Shown in pieces: positions 37,549 through 46,527 of a stretch of DNA of 64,000 nucleotides. The position numbers were made by a program, and so were the translations under genes. Under the pieces are notes generated by a model. That model was not told where the DNA came from. It was given only the letters and a program-made list of their open reading frames with translations, and did not search any database. The stretch spans positions 35,489 through 99,488 of the forward strand of contig JAADVB010000042.1 in NCBI GenBank assembly GCA_023334545.1. Reading direction: 5' to 3'. Positions within the stretch are counted from its first letter, which is position 1, and every line of letters begins with the position of its first letter. The stretch comes from Salisapilia sapeloensis CBS 127946 (Eukaryota > Protista > Oomycota).

Positions 37549-38996
37549 CTAGAACATGGACACTGCCGAGCAATGGTCGACATTCTCTGGCACTGGATCC
37601 AATACATGGAACCGATTAAAGTCGATGACCACGCCTTTATCTGTTTTCTGGACGCAATTCTGGAACGTCGAGTCCCATGCAATGTCCTGCTCTGCATATG
37701 AATGTCTCGCTTGCGTCGTGCTACTCGTGCTACAATCAATTCCTTCCAAAATTGCTACTACTTCCACTTCAGACTGTCGTAGATGGTTTACAATCTGTCT
37801 TCTCGTTGGCTCTTGGAATGGCTTTTGCTCCGAATGACCTTCTCGATTGCCATTCTCCAAGTCCACTTGCCGCTGCTTTGGATCCGGATACGCTGGCGTG
37901 AACGACTGGTACTGTCCTTCGTCTTGCTTTGGTGGAAGACACTCGGGCGGGAAGAGTGGACTCCATGGATCGATCCGATGGACGATCACTTGGGGTAAAG
38001 CCATGAGCAACGTCGCTCCGAGTTCGTCATCTGGCTGCTGAATACGCATCTGATGGCACTGGAAGAGACGCTCTGGGTTTGTGTATGAAGTCGAGACGGA
38101 GTTGTAGTCGTGTCGGACAGCATAGAGGCGAATGTGGGCTTCGACTAGCTGATGCTTCCGACGTTCACAGACTTGGAACATGAGGTAAAAGTGTCCTCGG
38201 ATCTTCCGGATGATCGCGGCGTTGGAGAAGAGGATGGTGTTCGCTCGAGAGTTGGCACGAGAGAAGCGAGCGAAGAAGAGACCAATGCAGATGGAGTCGA
38301 GGAAGATACCAGCAAAGGACTAGGATCTACGTTAGTGTTTTTATAGGGATTTGAGTGAAGAGAAGCTACCTCGAGGGATAAGATGGTTGCCATTTGCAGA
38401 CAATTGCCAAAGAAAATGTCGTCCTGAGGAGCGCTATAGCCGATCGTCATCTAATAGTTGTTTAGACATGTCGATGATAGTAGAAAGATGGAGTGTACGA
38501 TTGTTTGGAGGGAAAAGAGATAAGCCTGCATGTAGTTGGAGAGTCCGACATGACAGTCTTTACTAGCATACGACACACGCATGTAGAGGACGCCAAATCC
38601 CATGATCGTTAACAAGTACTACTCGGGTTTTAGTGACATTCCATCGCGTAAATCATTGCAATGGATGCGTACGATAAAGAAAATGCCAAAGAGGATTTTC
38701 GGTGTGCTCGTGTTCAGGACGGTGTGGAAACTACGAAGAGCATTATTAACGAGTACTAGCGTATCTTCACAAGTGCTAACGTACCTGTCATCATAGTATA
38801 TTTTACGCCAATCGCCACCTTTACGCACGATATTGTATCGTCCTAAGGACTGGCGGAAGCGACCTCGACGGTCGACGAAGCGGGTACGAAGAGGCGCATC
38901 GTGATTCACAATCCCAGAGATCGCTTTATTCTTCGTCGGCGTCCGTACGAGCAGCGGTTGTTCTACATCTAGCGTAATATCCATCGGTCCTTCCAT
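37549..38996 (-). CDS. Inward-rectifier (Kir)-family channel, multi-exon
   Basis: Motifs 'RFVDRRGR', 'FHTVLN', pore 'FSLQTIMTIGYS', TM2 'GIFLDSICIGLFFARFSR', 'ILFSNAAII', 'HQLVEAH', 'EVVAILEG', 'QARHSY' and 'IDFNRFH'. Confidence 0.88.
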
Positions 38997-39203
38997 CCCC
39001 ACGTCGCACTCCACCAATGTACGACAAGCTAGTGGAAGGCGCTATCTACCAGATAGACGCCAAGAGTCGCTGCGACTCGAGTCGTCCTTTGTGATTTGAG
39101 CACGATTGGACAACAAATTGAAGCGAACGAGATCATTTGTTGTTGCTTGAATTGTGTCAGTTAGACCCAAAACTAGTCAAACTATTATCGGAGACACGTA
39201 GCA

Positions 39204-40117
39204 ATGAGCTTCCTCCGTTTGTCGTGCTTGCTGCTACTAGCGCTAGTTTCTTGGTCCTTTGTGCATGCAGAAGAAGCTTCCCCTGTTGCAGAGCCAGAGG
39301 TCCCGCAAGAGGAGGAGCTTAAAGCGCATGTGAGCCACATCCTCGTAGCCTCGGAAGAGGAGGCGGATGACATTTTTGCTCAATTGCAGCAGGAAAAGGT
39401 GCCTCTTGTGCGATTCGGCAAGATAGCAATGGAGATCAGTCTGGATGAAACGACAAAGGCGAAGGGGGGCGACATGGGCTGGCTCACGTACGGCGAAATG
39501 GAGCCGGAAGTCGCGGAAGTCGCGTTCCACGTGCCGTCCTTCCGCCAGGTGCGCAAGGTGAAGAGTGCAAAGGGCTGGCACATACTCTACACTTCCCACT
39601 TTTCCGAAACCGAGGACCCGAGCTCTTGGAGAAATACTGTTCGATCCTTCTTGCTCTGGGCATCACCTGCTATCTCACCCATGATCATCCTGATTGCCAT
39701 GTACTGTGGCACGAGAGCGAGTGAGTCGACTATCAAGTCTGGTAAGAAGGGTCCGAGAGCTAGAGCAAGCCACGTATTGGTGAACAAAGAGGAGGAAGCG
39801 GATGAGGTGCTAAAATTGGTCTCCGAGGCCAGTGATAAGCAGAAAAAGTTGGCCGAGCTGGCGGAAATCAAGAGCAAGTGTCCATCGAGGAAGCGAGGTG
39901 GAGACCTCTCGTGGTTTGGTCGTGGCGAAATGGTCAAGGCCTTTGACAATATCGTCTTTGAGAAGGAAATTGGATCCGTCCACAAGGTCAAGACACAGGT
40001 ATAAAGTTTATTTTTAGATTGGAATGGATAGAAGAGGACTGATCGTGTGTATAGTTTGGCTATCATGTTGTCATGGTCACGGATCGTGCGGATGGAGAAG
40101 AAAAGAAGGAAAAGTAG
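39204..40117 (+). CDS. Signal peptide - parvulin - TM - parvulin protein (PpiC-type PPIase); exons 39204-39998, 40055-40117
   Basis: Two rotamase domains: SHILV...GGDMGW...KGWHI and SHVLV...SKCPS..RGGDLSWF.RG.MV.AF...KTQFGYHVV. A hydrophobic helix lies between them and the protein ends in KKEK. Confidence 0.88.
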
Positions 40118-40152
40118 TTGGGGCTTCTAGCAAAATATCCATCTTGACATTC

Positions 40153-40592
40153 TTACAACTCGATTTTCGTTTCTTGTTCATCTTCGGTATCCCAACGCTC
40201 TGTCACTAGCACTAGATGGCATCCCTCCTAGTGGTTTATTAGCATTTTGTATGTCGTAAGAGTGAAAATTAGACACGTACCTCCATCCCGGCACGTTGGA
40301 GTGTGAACATCTCTTCGTCAAAGATGGCTTTGTCGAGAGGGAGAGGCAGCTCTCCCTTGGTAACAGTGCCCATGCTACCACCCATACGACCTGAGGAGGC
40401 TTTACTCCGCTCGATAGCCATGGCCTGGAAGCGTCGAAGTAGCTCGTTGTCATCTTTTGCACGGCTAAGTCGATGCATCATGCCGTTGCACATGAACTCA
40501 TCCTCGACCAATATGTGATAGACCGTCGCTTGCTGCTCAGCAACGATGCTCTGCATGGCGGTCATCGCCAGTGCGCATAAGAAGACGAACAT
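40153..40592 (-). CDS. Small secretory parvulin-like protein (128 aa); exons 40281-40592, 40153-40227
   Basis: Signal peptide MFVFLCALAMTAMQSIVA, YHILV, GGSMG, LDKAIF and EGCHLV; ends ETKIEL; 53-bp intron. Confidence 0.78.
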
Positions 40593-40727
40593 GACCGTAA
40601 TACGTGTGCGTTTTAACTGTGGACTTGCTATCTTCAGAATTTAAATATCGTATCTCCAAGATAAAAATATATTTGCATTTGGATTTATATCGCATGCATT
40701 CGGAATAGAATTTGATTAGCAGCACGG

Positions 40728-41310
40728 ATGCCGTCTTCATGCTCCGAGGCACCGTCGAAACGATCAAGACGACGGTCCTTGTCTGTGCCAGAGGAAAAAC
40801 GTCGTGCGTGTATTGAACTCCGGCAAAGTGGAGCGTCATGGTCGAAAATTGCGACTGATTTAGGTAGCTTCCTCCTACTGCGTATGCAATCGAGTATGAC
40901 GAACGTCTTCTGTAGGCATCGCTCGCTCCACGGTTCGATGTATCGTGCTCAGATATGACCAGACTGGCAGCACAGAGGACAAGAAACGCAGCGGTAGGCC
41001 GTCTGCGACGAAACCAGAGGAAGATGAGCTCATCGCGAGTCTTGCCATGAGCCACAAGACGCACTCGCGCAACCATCTCATGGCACTCTTAAAGGAGAAA
41101 GGTGTCCAAATCTCCATTGCAACACTCCAGCGTCGTCTCCGGAACTACCATCAGAAGGAGTCTCCACACGAGGGGGAAACGAATTCGTCCGAGCACGTTC
41201 CGTTGCTGGAAGAGTCGAATGAGGCAGCTTCAGGAGACACGGAGCTTCCTCTCCATCTTAGTCAAGACTTATTCTCTCCTTCCGACACGACTGAACACGT
41301 TACAGTATAA
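40728..41310 (+). CDS. Tc1/Tc3-type bipartite HTH DNA-binding protein without catalytic domain; exons 40728-40863, 40916-41310
   Basis: SWSKIATDLGIARSTVRCIVLRY..TGS.EDKKRSGRP...ISIATLQRRL; 52-bp intron inside HTH1; no DDE domain and no TIRs seen. Confidence 0.75.
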
Positions 41311-41346: not shown

Positions 41347-43605
41347 TTAGTCCTCGACTCCTTCATTTTCACGCACGTCCAAGTCGGATGGATCGACCTG
41401 TGTCACTTGCATCAATCGCCTCCTCTCAGCCATCTTCCCATCTCGAACAATGTCCGGCCGGAGTTTATGCAGCACACATCGACGCTGCGTATTTCGTAGT
41501 CGCATCAGCACTGGATGCTCACACATGCCCAAGACTTCGCATACGCTCGTGTTCAGCTCTTCACACGTGACACTCGCCAGTCGCTCGGCCATGCGCTGGC
41601 CTAACTTCTCTGCCCCCTTCTCAGCATTCTCCACGACGGTCGGTTCACATAAGGAGCACAAGGCGATGCTGACGGTGAAGACACCGTCGAGACCCATGAG
41701 GAAGCAGACGTCCCAACAGAGCAAGAGCGTGTCGAAACGGAGTTGCGCGTGCGCGGCCGTGAAGCACACGTCCGAGAAGAGTGTCGGGAACCACTTGTGT
41801 GCTAGCATGCAGACCGGTAGTCCTGCTTCCAGCAACGTCTCAGAAAAGACCGGGAGCTGGACTTGCACGACATCTTCCAGGACAGACCCGACGTCCGACA
41901 AAGACGTGAAGAGATCGGATGGCTGCGTGTCTTGCGGTCGATTGGCAGAGAAAACTTGAGGGAGGATGTGTCGTACGATACCAGCAAAGAAGTTAAACGT
42001 CGGTTCGATGGCATCGTCAAAGGCGTAGAGCAAGAGATACGCGATGCCGTTCATGCCCTGCATGTACACTCGCGTCTTGAGCTCCCACTGCCCCTCTTCC
42101 TTGACATCTATCTGCAGCTTATCTACTGTCTGGGCTACGAATGCATTCAGCACGACTTCTAACGCCTCCAACCTCTTCCGAGTAGCTTCTGGACTAAGAT
42201 CCGGAGCTTCGTGACTGCCTTGGAGCCATCGAGATGTACGTGGAATGTCCTTATCCATCTGCACGCGATCGCTGTGTGGGATCTCTCGACGACTCCACTT
42301 TCGGATCTCGTCCTCTGAGATCGAGTCGAGAGCCCATGCAAACGCTGGTGGCCAGTACTCTGGTCGCAAGTCAGTGTACCGTACGAGTAGCTGCAAGGCT
42401 TCGATGAATCTGCCTTCTTTTTGGAGGAAGAGGAGTAGACCACCGACTTCCGAGCCTTGCATCTCGTCTGAAGACGAGGAAGGACTGTTGTCGGAAGGAT
42501 GGAGGTCTAGGTCTAGCAGGGAAGAGTCATGACGAATGTGACGAGCGCTTTCGTCCAAGAGAGACGAGAGCGAGATTTCACTAGGGAGAGAAGTGTTGAT
42601 CTGAGGCAAGTACAAGGACGTCTGGAGGCTAGTGATCCAGTCGTCTCGGTCGGACGTGGATGGCGTGGTGAAGGTGATGGGAGCGTCGTACACGAGAACG
42701 AAGCTGGATGTAGAAGACGGGAGGACGCTGTCTGGGGTGAGGAAGGATAAGTCGAAGAGCTGGGAGTGGGTGCTTTTCGACTGCGCTTTGCAGAAGAGCT
42801 TGTTTCGGGATAAAACGCCAGTGTATTGCTGTCCATCAATGACGAGGGTATCACGTTTGGAAGGGAAGGTGGCGAATGTGAGTGTGAGTTGAGGCAACGA
42901 GTGCGAGCGTAAGCACGTCAATACTTCCGAGTAGGAAGCAAAGGATGTGATGCGCATGCCGTTCACGCCAACGAGACACGCACCGGCCGTCAAGTACGTG
43001 GAGTCAATAGGCATATCTTCTTGGAGCTCGACGCAGGCCATTCGAGTCATGTCAGTCTCTTTATGTGATAGAGCTCGGATGATTCGCTCCATCTCTTCGT
43101 CGGACGAGATGTGCACTTCCGTTAGTAGGTCCTCTGCTAAGCTCTGGTAAAGAGAAGAGTCATCATCTTCTTCTGTCCAGTCCGAGAGACTGTGTAGGTG
43201 AGCAGTGGATATCTGTTGAGCAAAAAATGTAATCGTGGCGATCCACAAGTCCATCAGTTCCTTGGTCTTGCATGCGTAGATCAACTTGAGAGGCGTTTCG
43301 CTCGTGTGGATGGGATATGCCTCGACCTGAAACGCGAACTGCTTACCTGCTTTTCTAAAAGGTACTGGTTTCACTGGAGGCTTATTGTTGTCGACGCTAT
43401 TGCGATGGAAAGGTCGAATACGATACTGACTGTACAGTGTCATGCCACTGCTGGACCGACTGCGCTGTTTTGGACGAGTTAGCGTCCCACTCGTGAGCTT
43501 GTACTCCTTGAGCACACCATCTCGCTTGGATAGGACAATATATCGCTGGTTCCACGTAAACAACAGTCGACCACGGGCTTTACGAACCCACAGACTGCCT
43601 TCCAT
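41347..43605 (-). CDS. PH-PDZ-PH-TBC Rab GTPase-activating protein (intronless)
   Basis: PH 'EGSLWVRK...WNQRYIVL...DLWIATI', PDZ-like 'LVGVNG', second PH ending 'RDDWITSLQ', TBC arginine finger DKDIPRT and glutamine finger YMQGMN. Confidence 0.87.
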   Translation of the reverse strand: MEGSLWVRKARGRLLFTWNQRYIVLSKRDGVLKEYKLTSGTLTRPKQRSRSSSGMTLYSQYRIRPFHRNSVDNNKPPVKPVPFRKAGKQFAFQVEAYPIHTSETPLKLIYACKTKELMDLWIATITFFAQQISTAHLHSLSDWTEEDDDSSLYQSLAEDLLTEVHISSDEEMERIIRALSHKETDMTRMACVELQEDMPIDSTYLTAGACLVGVNGMRITSFASYSEVLTCLRSHSLPQLTLTFATFPSKRDTLVIDGQQYTGVLSRNKLFCKAQSKSTHSQLFDLSFLTPDSVLPSSTSSFVLVYDAPITFTTPSTSDRDDWITSLQTSLYLPQINTSLPSEISLSSLLDESARHIRHDSSLLDLDLHPSDNSPSSSSDEMQGSEVGGLLLFLQKEGRFIEALQLLVRYTDLRPEYWPPAFAWALDSISEDEIRKWSRREIPHSDRVQMDKDIPRTSRWLQGSHEAPDLSPEATRKRLEALEVVLNAFVAQTVDKLQIDVKEEGQWELKTRVYMQGMNGIAYLLLYAFDDAIEPTFNFFAGIVRHILPQVFSANRPQDTQPSDLFTSLSDVGSVLEDVVQVQLPVFSETLLEAGLPVCMLAHKWFPTLFSDVCFTAAHAQLRFDTLLLCWDVCFLMGLDGVFTVSIALCSLCEPTVVENAEKGAEKLGQRMAERLASVTCEELNTSVCEVLGMCEHPVLMRLRNTQRRCVLHKLRPDIVRDGKMAERRRLMQVTQVDPSDLDVRENEGVED

Positions 43606-44488
43606 GAGTTCTTCGCGTTGGGTGGTCTTGGTATGGTCAAAAGTACTTCTAAGTGTACAGCAAAGACGGAAATGTCTAGCTCGACGACGTATCTCGCCAA
43701 CGGACGAGAGAAATGGTGCTACTGCGCGTTCTGGACAGCACAAGCAGCGGTCGGAAGTGGAGTCCGAATCACCTGATAGTGGATATTTCTGGACGTATAG
43801 CCTGGTGGACTATTATCTATGCACTGCCACAGTCGATACAATGTACTGTGATCCGTTTAGAAGGGCAAGTGTCCGTCGTGTGCCTGATGAGATCTGCTAA
43901 TGCTACTTGCACGAATGAATGCAGGAGCGCGATTGAATATGTTAAATGTACGAAGGAGCTCTTCGATATAAAAGATACGGCTGCGACGCCCCAACAGTTA
44001 CCTTACTTCCATGTTGCTTTACATACGCACAAGACTGTAAGTAGTTTCTACTCGTCGTACAAAGATACTCAAGGGGTATTGCAATGTTGCGTGTGTAGAT
44101 TGTTAAGTAGATGGTAATGTCTACGCCAAGACTGAGAAGCTGCGCAAGGACCGGATCTAAGTCGATCGTTTGTGGGTGTATTTGCTCCCAACTTGAAAAG
44201 CTTCAGACAATTGGACATTTGGCCAGATCTAAGCACTAGAAAAGTATCCAAAGTAGGTGAGAAAACAGAGCTTGCGAAGGCGTGCACATAAGAGTACAGA
44301 GGTTGGCACTAGTAGACAAGGGAGGTGTATGAATACATGTAGTAGAATGGTAGTACAAACTTGTAATTGCATTAGAACGAGAAAGGCAAATGAAAGATGA
44401 AGATAAAGAGCCTTTTAAACTACTCTGTCCAAGTGACAACATATTCACGCACATACATGGTACGGATTCCACCTGGTGGTTGCCAACA

Positions 44489-45331
44489 CTATGGTGTCGT
44501 CTTCCTCTTTTTGCGTCCAACGGCAAGATTATGGCGCTGCATGAAGCGAGAGATCCAGTTGGAGGATGGTACAAATTGCTTGTCTTCGAAAAGCTGGTTG
44601 GCAGCCGTTGCGATCCACTCTTTCGATACCGTACCTGTCTTCTGTCGCTGACGGATAATTGACACGAGTATCTCTTCTTCGTCCGCCATCAGCTTCGGTT
44701 TCCGTCCGCCACCAGAAATCCGAGTTCGTACCTCGTCACCATTCAAGATAAGGTCACGATTTTGCCACCACTTTCGAATACAAGAAGATGGAACGTGTTG
44801 CTGCTTGTCTGCAAAATGCTTATCTGCCCGAGAGGGCATGCCCTCACCTTCGGTCTGTATCCACCGAATGACCTCCTGCTTGAAACTAATTGGCCAGCTA
44901 TGTCTTTTCGTTTTGCTAGAGCTACTTTCATACTTTGTCTGTTGTGTGATAATGGATGCGGAAGCTTCTGACATTGTCTGTATGTCCATCGAAAGCGATG
45001 GGTTGGTAGTCGGTGGGACGTCCGACGTCGATTTGTCGCCAGTAGCAGGTTCGTCGACATGATTGAGCTCTAACCTAGTTGTTTCCGTTGGTGACGGGTC
45101 AGAGATGGCTACAGAAGAGTGTATATTGGACTCAGACAGCATGGAAGCTATCGTGTCATTCGATGGCGCTGGTTTGATATCAGCATCCTTCTGAGTATGA
45201 CGATTGCGAGCCTTGACGAGACTCAATAGATGTTCGAGCGTTTCCTCCAGCGTATCATTGGCATAGGCTTCACCGATCATGGTAGCCATTGCGATGGATG
45301 AAGGAAAGCAGGTGTCCTCCGTCGTGCTCAT
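44489..45331 (-). CDS. pogo-type Brinker + CENP-B/Tc5 HTH DNA-binding protein without DDE domain
   Basis: KRHSWPISFKQEVI...IRKWWQNR (Brinker-like), GGGRKP linker, EEILVSII...FVPSSNWISRFMQRHNL (CENP-B HTH); the stop follows directly. Confidence 0.78.
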   Translation of the reverse strand: MSTTEDTCFPSSIAMATMIGEAYANDTLEETLEHLLSLVKARNRHTQKDADIKPAPSNDTIASMLSESNIHSSVAISDPSPTETTRLELNHVDEPATGDKSTSDVPPTTNPSLSMDIQTMSEASASIITQQTKYESSSSKTKRHSWPISFKQEVIRWIQTEGEGMPSRADKHFADKQQHVPSSCIRKWWQNRDLILNGDEVRTRISGGGRKPKLMADEEEILVSIIRQRQKTGTVSKEWIATAANQLFEDKQFVPSSNWISRFMQRHNLAVGRKKRKTTP

Positions 45332-45463
45332 CACTTGACCTCCAATTTACAAGCCTCTTATCTTTTATTTTGGTTCATACGCTATCGACTGGTCAAATGA
45401 TTCGATGAGGCATACTTTAATCAAGTGACCACACATTAAAGTGGACACCAAACTTGGAAGACG

Positions 45464-46527
45464 ATGGCTCGAGTCGTTTGCATTCTGTCTCCAGCTAAAA
45501 GCCTCGATACTTCGTTGCCAGTGATTAAAAAATGTTCCCAGCCATCTATGCTTGAGAGTGCGGATGAATTGGTATGACTTTTGTTGTAAATGATGTCATT
45601 TAAGACCGCTTTTATGACGATTGGGACCATGATCAGATTGACATTCTTCGCAAGAAGTCTCAGAAGCAAGTCCAGTCTCTCCTTGGCGTTAGTGCCAACC
45701 TAGCTAAACTCAATTACGATCGGTATGGTAACTATTAACACTATTTCTTTAGTACGACCACTTACAAGTATGATTCAATGCTAGCTACCAGAGCTTTATG
45801 AAAAGTGACGAAGCGAAAAAGGTGACAGAGCCGACAGACACGTTCAAACAAGCTGCGTTGGCGTTTGACGGTCCAGCCTTCCAAGGCCTGGAAGCTTCAA
45901 AATGGTCCGATGACGATCTCGAGTATGCTCAAAGCCACTTGCGTATTCTATGTGGCCTATATGGTACGCGCACACATGCTTGATCAAGCACTTCTTGCCT
46001 CATTTATATCTGTAGGAGCGTTGCGTCCATTGGATTTGATCCAGCCATATCGACTAGAGATGGGTCAGAAGCTTGACAATCCCAAGGGCAAGGACCTGTA
46101 CTCTTACTGGGGTTCCTCCATTGCTACTGAAAGCCTTAATCCGCTATTTCGCTCGGGTGACGGCGAGAAAATTATTGTCAATGTCGCGTCCAATGAATAC
46201 TCCAAGAGTGTGGACGAGGAGGCGCTAGCAGACGATATTCGCGTCATTCAATGTGTCTTCCAGGATGGCGGCAAAGTGAAAGCAGCCTATGCCAAGCGAG
46301 CTCGAGGCCTTATGTGCCGTTATATTGTGCAAGGTCGAGTGGAAACCTTGGAAAAGATCAAAGCATTTGACGTCGAAGGGTATGTGTTCCAAGAAGACGC
46401 TTCGGACGATAAAACGCTTGTGTTCAACCGTAGTCCAGATAAGCAAAAGGCAGTGTTAGCAGAGATCCGAGCGAAGCGGAAGCGAGACAAGGAGAGTGGC
46501 ACCTCGAAAAAACAAAAAGTCGAATGA
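45464..46527 (+). CDS. yaaA: YaaA/DUF328 (UPF0246) peroxide-stress DNA-binding protein, spliced
   Basis: [59 protein letters not shown] and AKRARGLM. Confidence 0.9.

What the first reader, a model, noticed from the sequence alone, without database searches (positions are those of the whole stretch)
39204..40592. Tail-to-tail pair of ER-targeted parvulins: candidate undescribed secretory-pathway foldase system
Seen in sequence: two convergent parvulin genes whose stop codons are 35 bp apart, both with signal peptides. One is a membrane protein ending KKEK, a KKxx dilysine motif. The other is a 128-aa soluble protein ending KIEL, an xxEL motif. Established: KKxx and KDEL-like tails retrieve proteins to the ER; the well-known ER prolyl isomerases are cyclophilins and FKBPs, while extracytoplasmic parvulins (SurA, PrsA, PpiD) are bacterial. 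Inference: a dedicated ER parvulin module with one membrane-bound and one luminal partner.
Basis: partly seen in the sequence, partly recalled or inferred. Interest (0 to 1): 0.85.

Follow-up and report, generated by a model that had tools for sequence, protein, structure and literature searches.

The report
ER-type parvulin foldase pair in an oomycete
Two neighbouring, expressed oomycete genes encode parvulin-type prolyl isomerases that carry signal peptides and conserved ER-retrieval tails, which points to an undescribed parvulin branch of the ER protein-folding machinery; localisation and activity have not been tested.

Summary
Gene A (39204-40117, +) and gene B (40592-40153, -) are convergent, their stops are 35 bp apart, and each has one short intron. 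Transcript contigs from three runs show both introns spliced exactly as predicted, so the C-termini KKEK and KIEL are real.

It reads signal peptide, parvulin, transmembrane helix, second parvulin, KKEK, which predicts one PPIase domain on each face of the membrane. Gene B is a very divergent 128-aa parvulin that lacks two residues of the catalytic network.

The family is present in most oomycete groups sampled:
- 8 of 8 complete large orthologs end in KKxx.
- 42 of 45 small orthologs end in [DE][LF] after an otherwise unalignable acidic tail.
- The convergent pairing recurs in five other oomycete contigs. It is broken in Phytophthora sojae and absent in Albugo candida.

All oomycete domains form one clade beside bacterial PpiC. 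I found no paper on ER or oomycete parvulins.

ER residence is well supported by inference but unproven. A functional "module" is not supported: the pair looks like an old inverted duplication sitting in conserved microsynteny. Other first-stage notes cover this same stretch; none concern other DNA.

The parts
39204..39998 (+). Gene A exon 1 (aa 1-265): signal peptide, parvulin domain 1, TM helix and most of parvulin domain 2
   Evidence: ORF and translation. Two Pfam Rotamase stretches. Oomycete orthologs at 41-48% identity. Present in transcript contigs.
39204..39269 (+). Gene A predicted signal peptide (aa 1-22, cleavage after VHA)
   Evidence: Hydropathy 1.7-1.9 over aa 1-22. A hydrophobic N-terminus is aligned in all orthologs. 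Inferred; SignalP was not run.
39312..39605 (+). Gene A parvulin domain 1 (aa ~37-134), predicted luminal. It is divergent: the conserved SKCPS motif is replaced by SLDET (Cys to Asp).
   Evidence: Pfam stretch 37-128. AF2 pLDDT is about 90 for this domain. Its tree branch is 2.28, against 0.41 for domain 2.
39645..39707 (+). Gene A transmembrane helix (aa ~148-168) with conserved prolines (ASPxxxP)
   Evidence: Hydropathy. Conserved in alignment A1. AF2 models a long helix at 142-178. Flank charges follow the positive-inside rule.
39756..40084 (+). Gene A parvulin domain 2 (aa ~185-275, interrupted by the intron), predicted cytosolic, with a canonical SKCPS...GGDL...FGYH motif set
   Evidence: Pfam. 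Alignment A1. Clade with other large-protein D2 domains, SH-aLRT 98.
39999..40054 (+). Gene A intron (56 nt, GT..AG, phase 0, between KTQ and FGYH)
   Evidence: Skipped in transcript contigs of X1-X3. Present at the same position in Lagenidium, P. brassicae, L003 and L004.
40055..40117 (+). Gene A exon 2 (aa 266-285 plus stop). The KKEK codons are at 40103-40114.
   Evidence: KKxx is found in 8 of 8 complete orthologs.
40118..40152 (.). 35-bp spacer between the two stop codons. The 3' UTRs must overlap.
   Evidence: One transcript contig runs through both genes.
40153..40227 (-). Gene B exon 2 (aa 105-128 plus stop). It holds the last beta-strand (EGCHLVLV) and the acidic tail. The KIEL codons are at 40167-40156.
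   Evidence: [DE][LF] is the ending in 42 of 45 orthologs.
40228..40280 (-). Gene B intron (53 nt, GT..AG on the minus strand, phase 0, at the codon homologous to gene A's intron)
   Evidence: Skipped in transcript contigs of X1-X3. The small genes of Lagenidium, P. brassicae, L003, L004, L009 and P. sojae have an intron at the same place.
40281..40592 (-). Gene B exon 1 (aa 1-104): predicted signal peptide (aa 1-18, 40592-40539) and a divergent parvulin domain. SKCPS is replaced by SKASS and GGDLG by GGSMG.
   Evidence: AF2 model has pLDDT 77, and all 50 listed Foldseek PDB matches are parvulins or parvulin-domain proteins.

Best explanation
The locus holds two paralogous PpiC-type parvulins of the early secretory pathway. 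They descend from an inverted duplication in an early oomycete.

Gene A is a type I membrane protein. Its signal peptide is cleaved. Parvulin domain 1 lies in the ER lumen, one helix crosses the membrane, and parvulin domain 2 lies in the cytosol. The C-terminal KKEK is a dilysine signal that COPI reads to return the protein from the Golgi to the ER.

Gene B is a small soluble luminal parvulin. Its acidic tail ends in KIEL, a KDEL-type signal read by the ERD2/KDEL receptor.

In most oomycetes all three domains keep the catalytic motifs, so they probably isomerise prolyl bonds of newly made secretory and membrane proteins on both faces of the ER membrane. In this organism the two luminal domains have diverged strongly. 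Gene B has lost the Cys/Asp and Thr of the catalytic network, so it more likely binds or chaperones substrates than catalyses, as the inactive parvulin domains of SurA and PpiD do.

Shown here: gene models, splicing, expression, parvulin homology, and conservation of architecture and tails. Inferred: signal-peptide cleavage, topology, ER residence, activity and clients. The two proteins need not interact.
For: - Splicing and both C-termini are confirmed in three runs.
- Pfam and the ortholog HMM support parvulin identity.
- AF2 models show parvulin folds plus a long TM helix, and all 50 listed Foldseek matches are parvulins or parvulin-domain proteins.
- The architecture SP-parvulin-TM-parvulin is conserved in 11 aligned orthologs.
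- KKxx sits at exactly -4/-3 in 8 of 8 complete large orthologs. [DE][LF] ends 42 of 45 small orthologs, as at least 16 different tetrapeptides after unalignable acidic tails.
- Flank charges fit a luminal N-terminus and cytosolic C-terminus.
- KxEL with any non-Pro residue at -3 gives efficient ER localisation in human cells (PMC2140024). A Phytophthora PDI ends in HEEL (PMC4539480).
- All oomycete domains form one clade (SH-aLRT 95), and D2 groups with the third paralog (98).
- The intron position is shared between D2 and the small gene.
Against: - There is no localisation, topology or activity experiment, and no SignalP or DeepTMHMM run.
- KIEL fails the PROSITE pattern at -3.
- 18 of 45 small orthologs (Phytophthora and its closest relatives) end in DRDL. 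Asp at -2 is weak in human cells, and -4 is not basic.
- The L004 ortholog ends RDLR, one residue past the motif.
- Albugo candida keeps only SP-parvulin-TM with the tail ARIKDD and has no KKxx.
- Dilysine signals usually sit on short tails rather than at the end of a folded 100-aa domain (my own knowledge).
- Gene B's place in the tree is unresolved because its branch is 3.32 long. Its orthology rests on synteny, intron position and architecture.
Confidence: 0.68

Rival explanations
1. This is the first reader's version: the two proteins form a dedicated two-component foldase. The membrane-bound parvulin and the soluble luminal parvulin work as physical partners, and selection for that partnership keeps the genes linked.
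For: Convergent adjacency is conserved in the window, Lagenidium, P. brassicae and three unnamed oomycete assemblies. Both products are predicted to meet in the ER lumen. In this organism both luminal domains diverged together, with branches of 2.28 and 3.32 against 0.41 for the cytosolic domain.
Against: - The flanking genes are conserved too (RabGAP-TBC, HTH, YaaA, Epg5), so linkage may only reflect slow decay of microsynteny after a tandem duplication.
- The pair is split in P. sojae.
- Albugo candida has no adjacent small gene.
- A stop-to-stop gap of 35-36 bp is common in this window according to another first-stage note.
- No interaction test was possible.
Confidence: 0.2
2. The small parvulin, and perhaps the large one, is not retained. 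It travels on to the Golgi, the vacuole or the outside of the cell, like bacterial PrsA/SurA-type extracytoplasmic parvulins or a secreted pathogen protein. The acidic tail then serves another purpose, for example binding calcium.
For: The endings DRDL, DKDL and KADL in many orthologs are weak or untested KDEL variants. Raykhel et al. note that many such tails are not required for ER residence. Oomycetes secrete many proteins that carry only a signal peptide (my own knowledge).
Against: The last two residues are fixed as [DE][LF] in 42 of 45 orthologs while the rest of the tail varies freely in length and sequence. That is hard to explain without a receptor that reads the free C-terminus. This organism's KIEL is a strong variant by the human data. 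The large protein's KKxx is invariant.
Confidence: 0.15
3. Gene B is a decaying duplicate with no remaining function in this organism. It is still transcribed only because it overlaps the 3' end of gene A.
For: - It has the longest branch in the tree (3.32).
- It is only 23-29% identical to its orthologs, which are 55-90% identical to P. sojae P0013, the one reference they were compared with.
- It has lost the near-invariant Cys, Pro and the FGRGQMV block.
- The word-index search with it found no homolog.
- Albugo candida appears to have lost the adjacent small gene altogether.
Against: - The frame is intact over 128 codons, the intron is correctly spliced, and the signal peptide and KIEL tail are retained.
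- The hydrophobic core positions and both His residues are kept.
- AF2 still folds it as a parvulin (pLDDT 77).
- It scores 67 bits against the ortholog HMM.
Confidence: 0.1

Closest known systems
E. coli PpiC (Par10) and other bacterial single-domain PpiC-type parvulins (PDB 1JNS)
   Same: They have the same domain family and the same motif set: SHILV, S-x-CPS, GGDLG, GQMVPEFD and TQFGYH. Oomycete small parvulins are about 55-65% identical to bacterial 92-aa PpiC proteins. 1JNS is among the best sequence and fold matches. Some bacteria also carry tandem double PpiC proteins (P0049, P0048).
   Different: Bacterial PpiC is a small protein with no signal peptide, TM helix or tail; that it is cytoplasmic is my own knowledge. 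The oomycete proteins add a signal peptide, a TM helix and eukaryotic retrieval tails, and they contain spliceosomal introns.
Bacterial extracytoplasmic parvulin chaperones: PrsA, SurA, PpiD and PEB4/HP0175
   Same: A parvulin domain is placed on the far side of the translocation membrane to help exported proteins fold. PpiD is membrane-anchored next to the translocon. The parvulin domains of SurA (domain 1) and PpiD are catalytically inactive yet useful, which is a precedent for gene B (my own knowledge). They appear among the sequence and fold matches.
   Different: Those proteins carry large N- and C-terminal chaperone domains (SurA_N and related). Pfam finds only Rotamase families in the window's proteins. 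None of them has a second parvulin on the cytoplasmic side or a eukaryotic sorting signal.
Known ER-resident PPIases of eukaryotes: cyclophilin B and FKBP13/23/65 (FKBP2, 7, 10, 14)
   Same: They share the predicted compartment and logic: a signal peptide plus a KDEL-type tail on a small PPIase. Raykhel et al. cloned and localised FKBP7 and FKBP14, which have PROSITE-matching tails, to the ER.
   Different: They belong to unrelated folds (cyclophilin and FKBP). To my knowledge, and in seven literature searches, no parvulin has been placed in the ER of any eukaryote.
Eukaryotic parvulins Pin1/Ess1 and Par14/Par17
   Same: They share the parvulin fold and the His-Cys/Asp-His-Thr network. Domain 1 of gene A uses Asp as Par14 does. 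Ess1 (7KKF) is the top PDB sequence hit for domain 2.
   Different: Pin1 has a WW domain and a phosphate-binding basic loop, and it is nuclear and cytosolic. Par14/17 has a basic N-terminal extension and is nuclear or mitochondrial (my own knowledge). None has a signal peptide, a TM helix or retrieval tails. In the tree the oomycete domains sit with bacterial PpiC, but Pin1 and Par14 were not included in it.

Membership tests
Parvulin / PpiC-type PPIase domain (Pfam PF00639, PF13616) | Sequence match above the curated Pfam threshold | tested here: met
   Gene A scores 92.2 and 90.1 bits with two stretches. Gene B exon 1 scores 22.0 bits against a cut-off of 21.7, which is marginal. Full-length gene B scores 67 bits against an HMM of oomycete small parvulins, while the best of 2000 shuffles scores 7.4.
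Parvulin / PpiC-type PPIase domain (Pfam PF00639, PF13616) | Parvulin fold (four-stranded sheet packed by helices) | tested here: met
   In the AF2 model of gene A, both domains have pLDDT of about 85-95. The AF2 model of gene B exon 1 has pLDDT 77. All 50 listed Foldseek PDB matches are parvulins or parvulin-domain proteins, but the E-values are weak (0.02 and above). The model carries the signal peptide and lacks the last strand.
Parvulin / PpiC-type PPIase domain (Pfam PF00639, PF13616) | Catalytic hydrogen-bond network: His, Cys or Asp, His, Thr or Ser (Pin1 H59-C113-H157-T152) | tested here: not met
   This verdict applies to gene B, where Cys is replaced by Ala and Thr by Met; both His residues are kept. 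Gene A domain 2 meets the feature (H, C, H, T). Gene A domain 1 meets it with Asp and Ser. The mapping of the network onto these sequences is from my own knowledge of Pin1 and Par14.
Parvulin / PpiC-type PPIase domain (Pfam PF00639, PF13616) | Measurable prolyl cis/trans isomerase activity | not testable with these tools
   This needs a protease-coupled or NMR exchange assay on recombinant domains.
Dilysine (KKxx/KxKxx) COPI-retrieved ER membrane proteins | Lys at -3 and at -4 or -5 from the free C-terminus | tested here: met
   KKEK, confirmed by RNA. Orthologs end KKSD, KKSE, KKSK, KKSN, KKND, KKSD and KKSD, which makes 8 of 8 with the window.
Dilysine (KKxx/KxKxx) COPI-retrieved ER membrane proteins | Membrane topology that puts the C-terminus in the cytosol | tested here: inconclusive
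   Predicted only. [quoted passage not shown] Flank charges are -2 to 0 before and +1 to +4 after the helix in 12 of 13 sequences; the 13th, P0007, is an artefact of a mis-spliced tail. There was no topology predictor and no experiment.
Dilysine (KKxx/KxKxx) COPI-retrieved ER membrane proteins | COPI binding and ER localisation that depend on the tail | not testable with these tools
   This needs localisation with and without the last four residues.
KDEL-type soluble ER residents (PROSITE PS00014) | Cleavable N-terminal signal peptide and no TM helix | tested here: inconclusive
   There is a hydrophobic core at aa 2-13, IVA at -3/-1, and no other hydrophobic stretch. All orthologs have a hydrophobic N-terminus. 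SignalP was not run.
KDEL-type soluble ER residents (PROSITE PS00014) | C-terminal tetrapeptide [KRHQSA]-[DENQ]-E-L | tested here: not met
   KIEL has Ile at -3. It does fit the experimentally widened rule (K at -4, any residue but Pro at -3, then E and L) from PMC2140024. Orthologs: 42 of 45 end in [DE][LF], but only a few match PROSITE strictly.
KDEL-type soluble ER residents (PROSITE PS00014) | Binding to the ERD2/KDEL receptor and tail-dependent retention | not testable with these tools
   This needs secretion and localisation assays with tail mutants in an oomycete.
SurA/PrsA/PpiD-type periplasmic chaperones | Chaperone module (SurA_N or PrsA N/C domain) flanking the parvulin domain | tested here: not met
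   Pfam finds only Rotamase and Rotamase_3 in both proteins. Outside the two domains, gene A has only the signal peptide, a 36-residue helix and short linkers. It may work like these chaperones but is not a member of the family.

The most novel reading that the evidence does not exclude
Gene A represents an undescribed class of ER-membrane-spanning double prolyl isomerases, with one PPIase domain in the lumen and one in the cytosol on a single polypeptide that KKxx keeps in the ER.

The same logic recurs in what look like other microbial eukaryotes, as FKBP-TM-parvulin with KKxx or KxKxx tails. Short-anchor TM-parvulin proteins with such tails also occur in at least one marine stramenopile (MAST-4).

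This would suggest a widespread protist device that acts on both ends of membrane or translocating proteins, perhaps at the translocon. Animals, fungi and plants, where ER folding has been studied, would lack it.
Probability: 0.3. Interest if true: 0.8.

Novelty: new variant of a known kind. Interest (0 to 1): 0.62.

Why it matters
Textbook ER prolyl isomerases are cyclophilins and FKBPs. Parvulins outside the cytoplasm are regarded as a bacterial speciality. A conserved oomycete family with signal peptides and KKxx or x[DE]L tails would add the third PPIase family to the eukaryotic ER.

It would also add an unusual design, with PPIase domains on both faces of the membrane. Oomycetes depend on mass secretion of proteins, so a lineage-specific part of their folding machinery is of basic interest and is absent from their plant and animal hosts.

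The family also offers a natural series for studying retrieval signals, since many tetrapeptide variants sit on one scaffold. It offers a second series for asking what a parvulin domain does once its catalytic residues are lost. All of this is testable with standard tagging and enzyme assays in transformable Phytophthora species.

Tried and rejected
- **Word-index search with gene B exon 1.** It found nothing. Orthologs were reached through synteny and through P. sojae P0013 instead.
- **Placing gene B in a domain tree.** This failed because of long-branch effects: its branch is 3.32 and it has no supported neighbour. I did not use the tree as evidence for its orthology.
- **Looking for further parvulin genes in the window.** A six-frame HMM scan found only these two.
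- **Mitochondrial or other targeting.** Rejected, because both N-termini are uncharged hydrophobic cores rather than amphipathic presequences.
- **Linkage as proof of a module.** Rejected after finding that the neighbouring genes are conserved as well and that the pair is split in P. sojae.
- **A bacterial contaminant origin.** Rejected, because both genes have spliced GT..AG introns and eukaryotic neighbours.
- **Literature.** Searches for oomycete or ER parvulins and for ortholog accession numbers found no relevant paper. Pemberton & Kay 2005 could not be read beyond its reference list.
- **Full spliced proteins.** The exon-1 pieces were used, so the gene B model lacks its last strand.
- **First-stage note s1-289734.** This note, on a PDI without a KDEL/HDEL signal elsewhere in the genome, could not be checked.
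Full report
**1. What is in the sequence**

Reading 38700-41100 and listing ORFs shows two convergent genes.

Gene A (+ strand):
- It starts at 39204 and runs to 39998. A 56-nt GT..AG intron follows (39999-40054), and the gene resumes at 40055 up to a TAG at 40115-40117.
- The spliced product has 285 aa and ends ...DRADGEEKKEK.

Gene B (- strand):
- It starts at 40592 and runs to 40281. A 53-nt intron follows (40280-40228), and the gene ends with a stop at 40155-40153.
- The product has 128 aa and ends ...EDEQETKIEL.

The stops are separated by 40118-40152, which is 35 bp.

**2. The splice sites and C-termini are real**

Four runs hold 81-85% of the sampled words of 39100-40700. I laid three of them on the stretch. 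In each, one assembled contig covers the region with zero mismatches. Each contig skips exactly 56 bases (GT..AG) and 53 bases (CT..AC, which is GT..AG on the minus strand) at the predicted places. Such spliced forms can only come from RNA, so both genes are transcribed and both tails are as predicted. The contigs run through both genes, as expected when convergent 3' UTRs overlap. Relative expression therefore cannot be read from them.

**3. What the proteins are**

Gene A:
- Pfam finds two Rotamase/Rotamase_3 stretches (92 bits).
- Hydropathy shows an N-terminal hydrophobic core (aa 1-22, with VHA before the likely cleavage site) and a single internal hydrophobic segment at about aa 148-168.
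- The architecture is therefore signal peptide, parvulin 1, TM helix, parvulin 2, KKEK.
- An AF2 model built on 11 orthologs gives confident parvulin folds for both domains, joined by a 36-residue helix (aa 142-178).

Gene B:
- It is barely recognised by Pfam (22.0 bits against a cut-off of 21.7, exon 1 only).
- A profile of its orthologs scores the full protein at 67 bits, against at most 7.4 for 2000 shuffles.
- AF2 folds exon 1 with pLDDT 77, and all 50 listed Foldseek PDB matches are parvulins or parvulin-domain proteins, though at weak E-values.

**4. Relatives and conservation of the large protein**

The large protein has orthologs at 41-48% identity in Pythium brassicae, Globisporangium, Lagenidium giganteum and several unnamed assemblies. 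Many database models read through the intron. Every model or locus with a complete C-terminus ends in KKxx at exactly -4/-3: KKSD, KKSE, KKSK, KKSN, KKND, KKSD, KKSD and KKEK. That is 8 of 8.

The flank before the TM helix carries net charge -2 to 0 and the flank after it +1 to +4 in all orthologs. This fits a luminal N-terminus and a cytosolic C-terminus, the side on which COPI reads dilysine signals (established knowledge).

A profile search of 1.84 billion representatives found only one cluster that covers the whole profile (P0143, 415 bits). The two-parvulin, TM-split architecture therefore seems confined to oomycetes.

**5. Relatives and conservation of the small protein**

Synteny led to the small orthologs. 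In Lagenidium and P. brassicae the large gene is followed by a convergent 134-136-aa parvulin gene.

Searching with P. sojae P0013 recovered the family in Phytophthora, Peronosclerospora, Plasmopara, Nothophytophthora, Pythium, Globisporangium, Lagenidium, Aphanomyces, Saprolegnia, Achlya and Thraustotheca.

Of 45 sequences with a complete last domain, 42 end in [DE][LF]:
- DRDL occurs 18 times, KKEL 6 times and KKDL 3 times.
- KDDL, DKDL, KADL, KTDL, TDEL, WDEL, DSEL, ESEL, EREL, DTDL, NKDL, DRDF and KIEL also occur.
- The acidic tail before the ending varies freely in length and sequence.

The three exceptions are an alternative P. cactorum model, a P. insidiosum model, and locus L004, which ends RDLR. 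Chance would give a [DE]L ending in roughly 1% of proteins (my estimate from residue frequencies). The terminal dipeptide is therefore under selection, as expected for a signal read at the free C-terminus.

How strong are these endings as retrieval signals?
- KIEL fails PROSITE PS00014 at -3.
- Raykhel et al. found that, in a KDEL context, -3 can be any residue except Pro, while Asp at -2 gives only partial ER localisation (PMC2140024).
- A classical Phytophthora PDI ends in HEEL (PMC4539480).
- The window's tail is therefore a good candidate signal. The DRDL tail of Phytophthora is a weaker or untested one.

**6. Linkage**

The convergent pair recurs in five other loci: L001, L002, L003, L004 and L009. 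The surroundings are conserved as well:
- RabGAP-TBC, an HTH transposase-derived gene and YaaA lie downstream in the window.
- RabGAP-TBC and an HTH gene lie downstream in Lagenidium.
- RabGAP-TBC and YaaA lie downstream in Albugo candida.
- Epg5 lies upstream in L004 and L009.

In P. sojae the small gene still sits next to the HTH gene, but the large gene is elsewhere. P. infestans has the large gene at another locus, broken by an assembly gap.

Albugo candida keeps only signal peptide, parvulin and TM helix, with the tail ...ARIKDD. It has no second domain and no adjacent small parvulin.

Linkage is thus best read as inheritance of an old inverted duplication. It is not evidence of a functional module.

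**7. Origin**

In a domain tree of 79 sequences, all oomycete domains form one clade (35 rows, SH-aLRT 95) set among bacterial PpiC proteins. That clade includes large D1, large D2, the small protein and a third paralog. D2 and the third paralog group together with support 98.

The intron lies at the same phase-0 position, between KTQ and FGWH, in D2 of the large gene and in the small gene. It is absent from D1. L009's large gene has lost it.

Bacterial single-domain PpiC proteins are about 55-65% identical to the oomycete small parvulins, and tandem double-PpiC proteins exist in bacteria. Whether the family entered by transfer from bacteria or is an old eukaryotic PpiC lineage cannot be decided on 96 alignment columns.

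**8. A peculiarity of this organism**

- The cytosolic domain 2 is ordinary (branch 0.41, SKCPS kept).
- Both luminal domains are on very long branches: D1 at 2.28 and gene B at 3.32.
- D1 has SLDET in place of SKCPS. This is Cys to Asp, as in Par14, so it may still be active.
- Gene B has Ala for the Cys/Asp and Met for the Thr of the His-Cys/Asp-His-Thr network. It also lacks the near-invariant Pro and the FGRGQMV block.
- Gene B's hydrophobic core, both His residues, the signal peptide and the tail are kept.

I read gene B as a probable non-catalytic binder or chaperone, by analogy with the inactive parvulin domains of SurA and PpiD (my own knowledge). It is not a pseudogene, but that rival is not excluded.

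**9. Comparison with what is known**

The domains belong to the PpiC/Par10 type. The proteins work like the bacterial extracytoplasmic parvulins PrsA, SurA and PpiD in where they are placed, but they lack the chaperone modules of those proteins.

In logic they resemble ER cyclophilin B and the ER FKBPs, but on a different fold. To my knowledge no eukaryotic parvulin has been assigned to the ER. Searches of 8.4 million full texts for parvulin with oomycete, Phytophthora, KDEL, ER lumen or stramenopiles, and for ortholog accession numbers, found nothing relevant. Databases name the orthologs only as 'PpiC-type peptidyl-prolyl cis-trans isomerase, putative'.

**10. Wider pattern seen in passing**

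The profile search also returned the following (taxon labels, where any exist, are):
- Proteins with a signal peptide, an FKBP domain, a TM helix, a parvulin and a basic tail that is KKxx or KxKxx in three of four: P0170 (KKSK), P0211 (KKMN), P0181 (KPKAA). P0179 ends AKTD, with Lys at -3 only. All four come from metagenome or transcript assemblies without a taxon label.
- Short TM-anchored parvulins with such tails: P0183 (KKRR), whose cluster includes a MAST-4 stramenopile protein, and P0193 (KxKxx tail) from EukProt. P0172, from MMETSP, is also TM-anchored but ends AKRD, which is not a dilysine motif.
- Soluble double parvulins ending in DDEL, KSEF or DAEL: P0090, P0059 and P0152.
- A Diplonema protein that joins a parvulin to a thioredoxin domain and ends in SEEL (P0160).

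Secretory-pathway PpiC-type parvulins may therefore be widespread in protists.

**11. Verdict**

The ER-targeting inference is well supported by conservation but remains untested at the bench. The 'module' inference is not supported. The family is a new variant of a known kind: a parvulin PPIase in a new compartment, with a new membrane-spanning architecture.

Noticed in passing
P0170, P0179, P0181, P0211 (metagenome and transcript proteins): These proteins have a signal peptide, an FKBP_C domain, one TM helix and a PpiC-type parvulin. Three end in a dilysine-type tail (KKSK, KKMN, KPKAA); P0179 ends AKTD, with Lys at -3 only. That is a mixed FKBP/parvulin counterpart of gene A's two-sided layout. 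Pfam confirms both domains. No taxon name is attached to them, and I found no description of such a fusion in the searched literature.
   Followed up: partly
P0160 (EukProt, Diplonema japonicum): This protein has a signal peptide, a parvulin and a thioredoxin domain with a CGSC motif, and it ends in SEEL. It looks like an ER-type fusion of a prolyl isomerase with a disulfide-isomerase-like domain.
   Followed up: partly
L003:3-610 (+) and P0161: This is a third oomycete paralog: signal peptide, short luminal stub, TM helix, cytosolic parvulin, and a tail ending KKAQ (L003) or KRKKH (P0161). In L003 it lies directly upstream of the large gene, so that locus holds three parvulin genes in a row. 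It groups with domain 2 of the large protein (SH-aLRT 98). The window has no such gene.
   Followed up: partly
L007:4001-4531 (Albugo candida, GCA_001078535.1) and L008: The Albugo candida homolog stops 16 residues after the TM helix (tail ARIKDD). It lacks domain 2, and an elicitin-like gene sits where the small parvulin would be. The flanking RabGAP-TBC and YaaA genes are syntenic with the window.
   Followed up: partly
window 39312-39605 and 40153-40592: Both predicted luminal parvulin domains of this organism lie on branches 5-8 times longer than the cytosolic domain of the same protein (2.28 and 3.32 against 0.41). This suggests that constraint was relaxed or changed specifically on the luminal side.
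   Followed up: partly
window 40728-41310, 41350-43743 (-), 44492-45334 (-), 45865-46524: The downstream genes are an HTH_32-like protein, a PH plus RabGAP-TBC protein, an HTH_Tnp_Tc5 protein and YaaA (H2O2_YaaD). The same gene set lies next to the parvulin locus in Lagenidium and Albugo, so microsynteny here is old.
   Followed up: partly
P0049, P0048, P0055, P0065, P0071: These are bacterial proteins of about 187 aa made of two tandem PpiC domains with no other part; one is annotated from Pelagicoccus mobilis. They are the best non-oomycete matches to the oomycete parvulins. They could be a model for the ancestor, or they could be independent duplications.
   Followed up: no
L004:5070-5171 (-): The small parvulin of this unnamed oomycete assembly ends ...DDLRDLR, one Arg beyond an RDL ending. 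Its close relative L009 ends ...DEREL. This is either an assembly error or a natural loss of the terminal motif.
   Followed up: no
L009:4001-4882: The large gene here is a single uninterrupted ORF. The phase-0 intron before FGWH that is present in the window, Lagenidium, P. brassicae, L003 and L004 has been lost.
   Followed up: no
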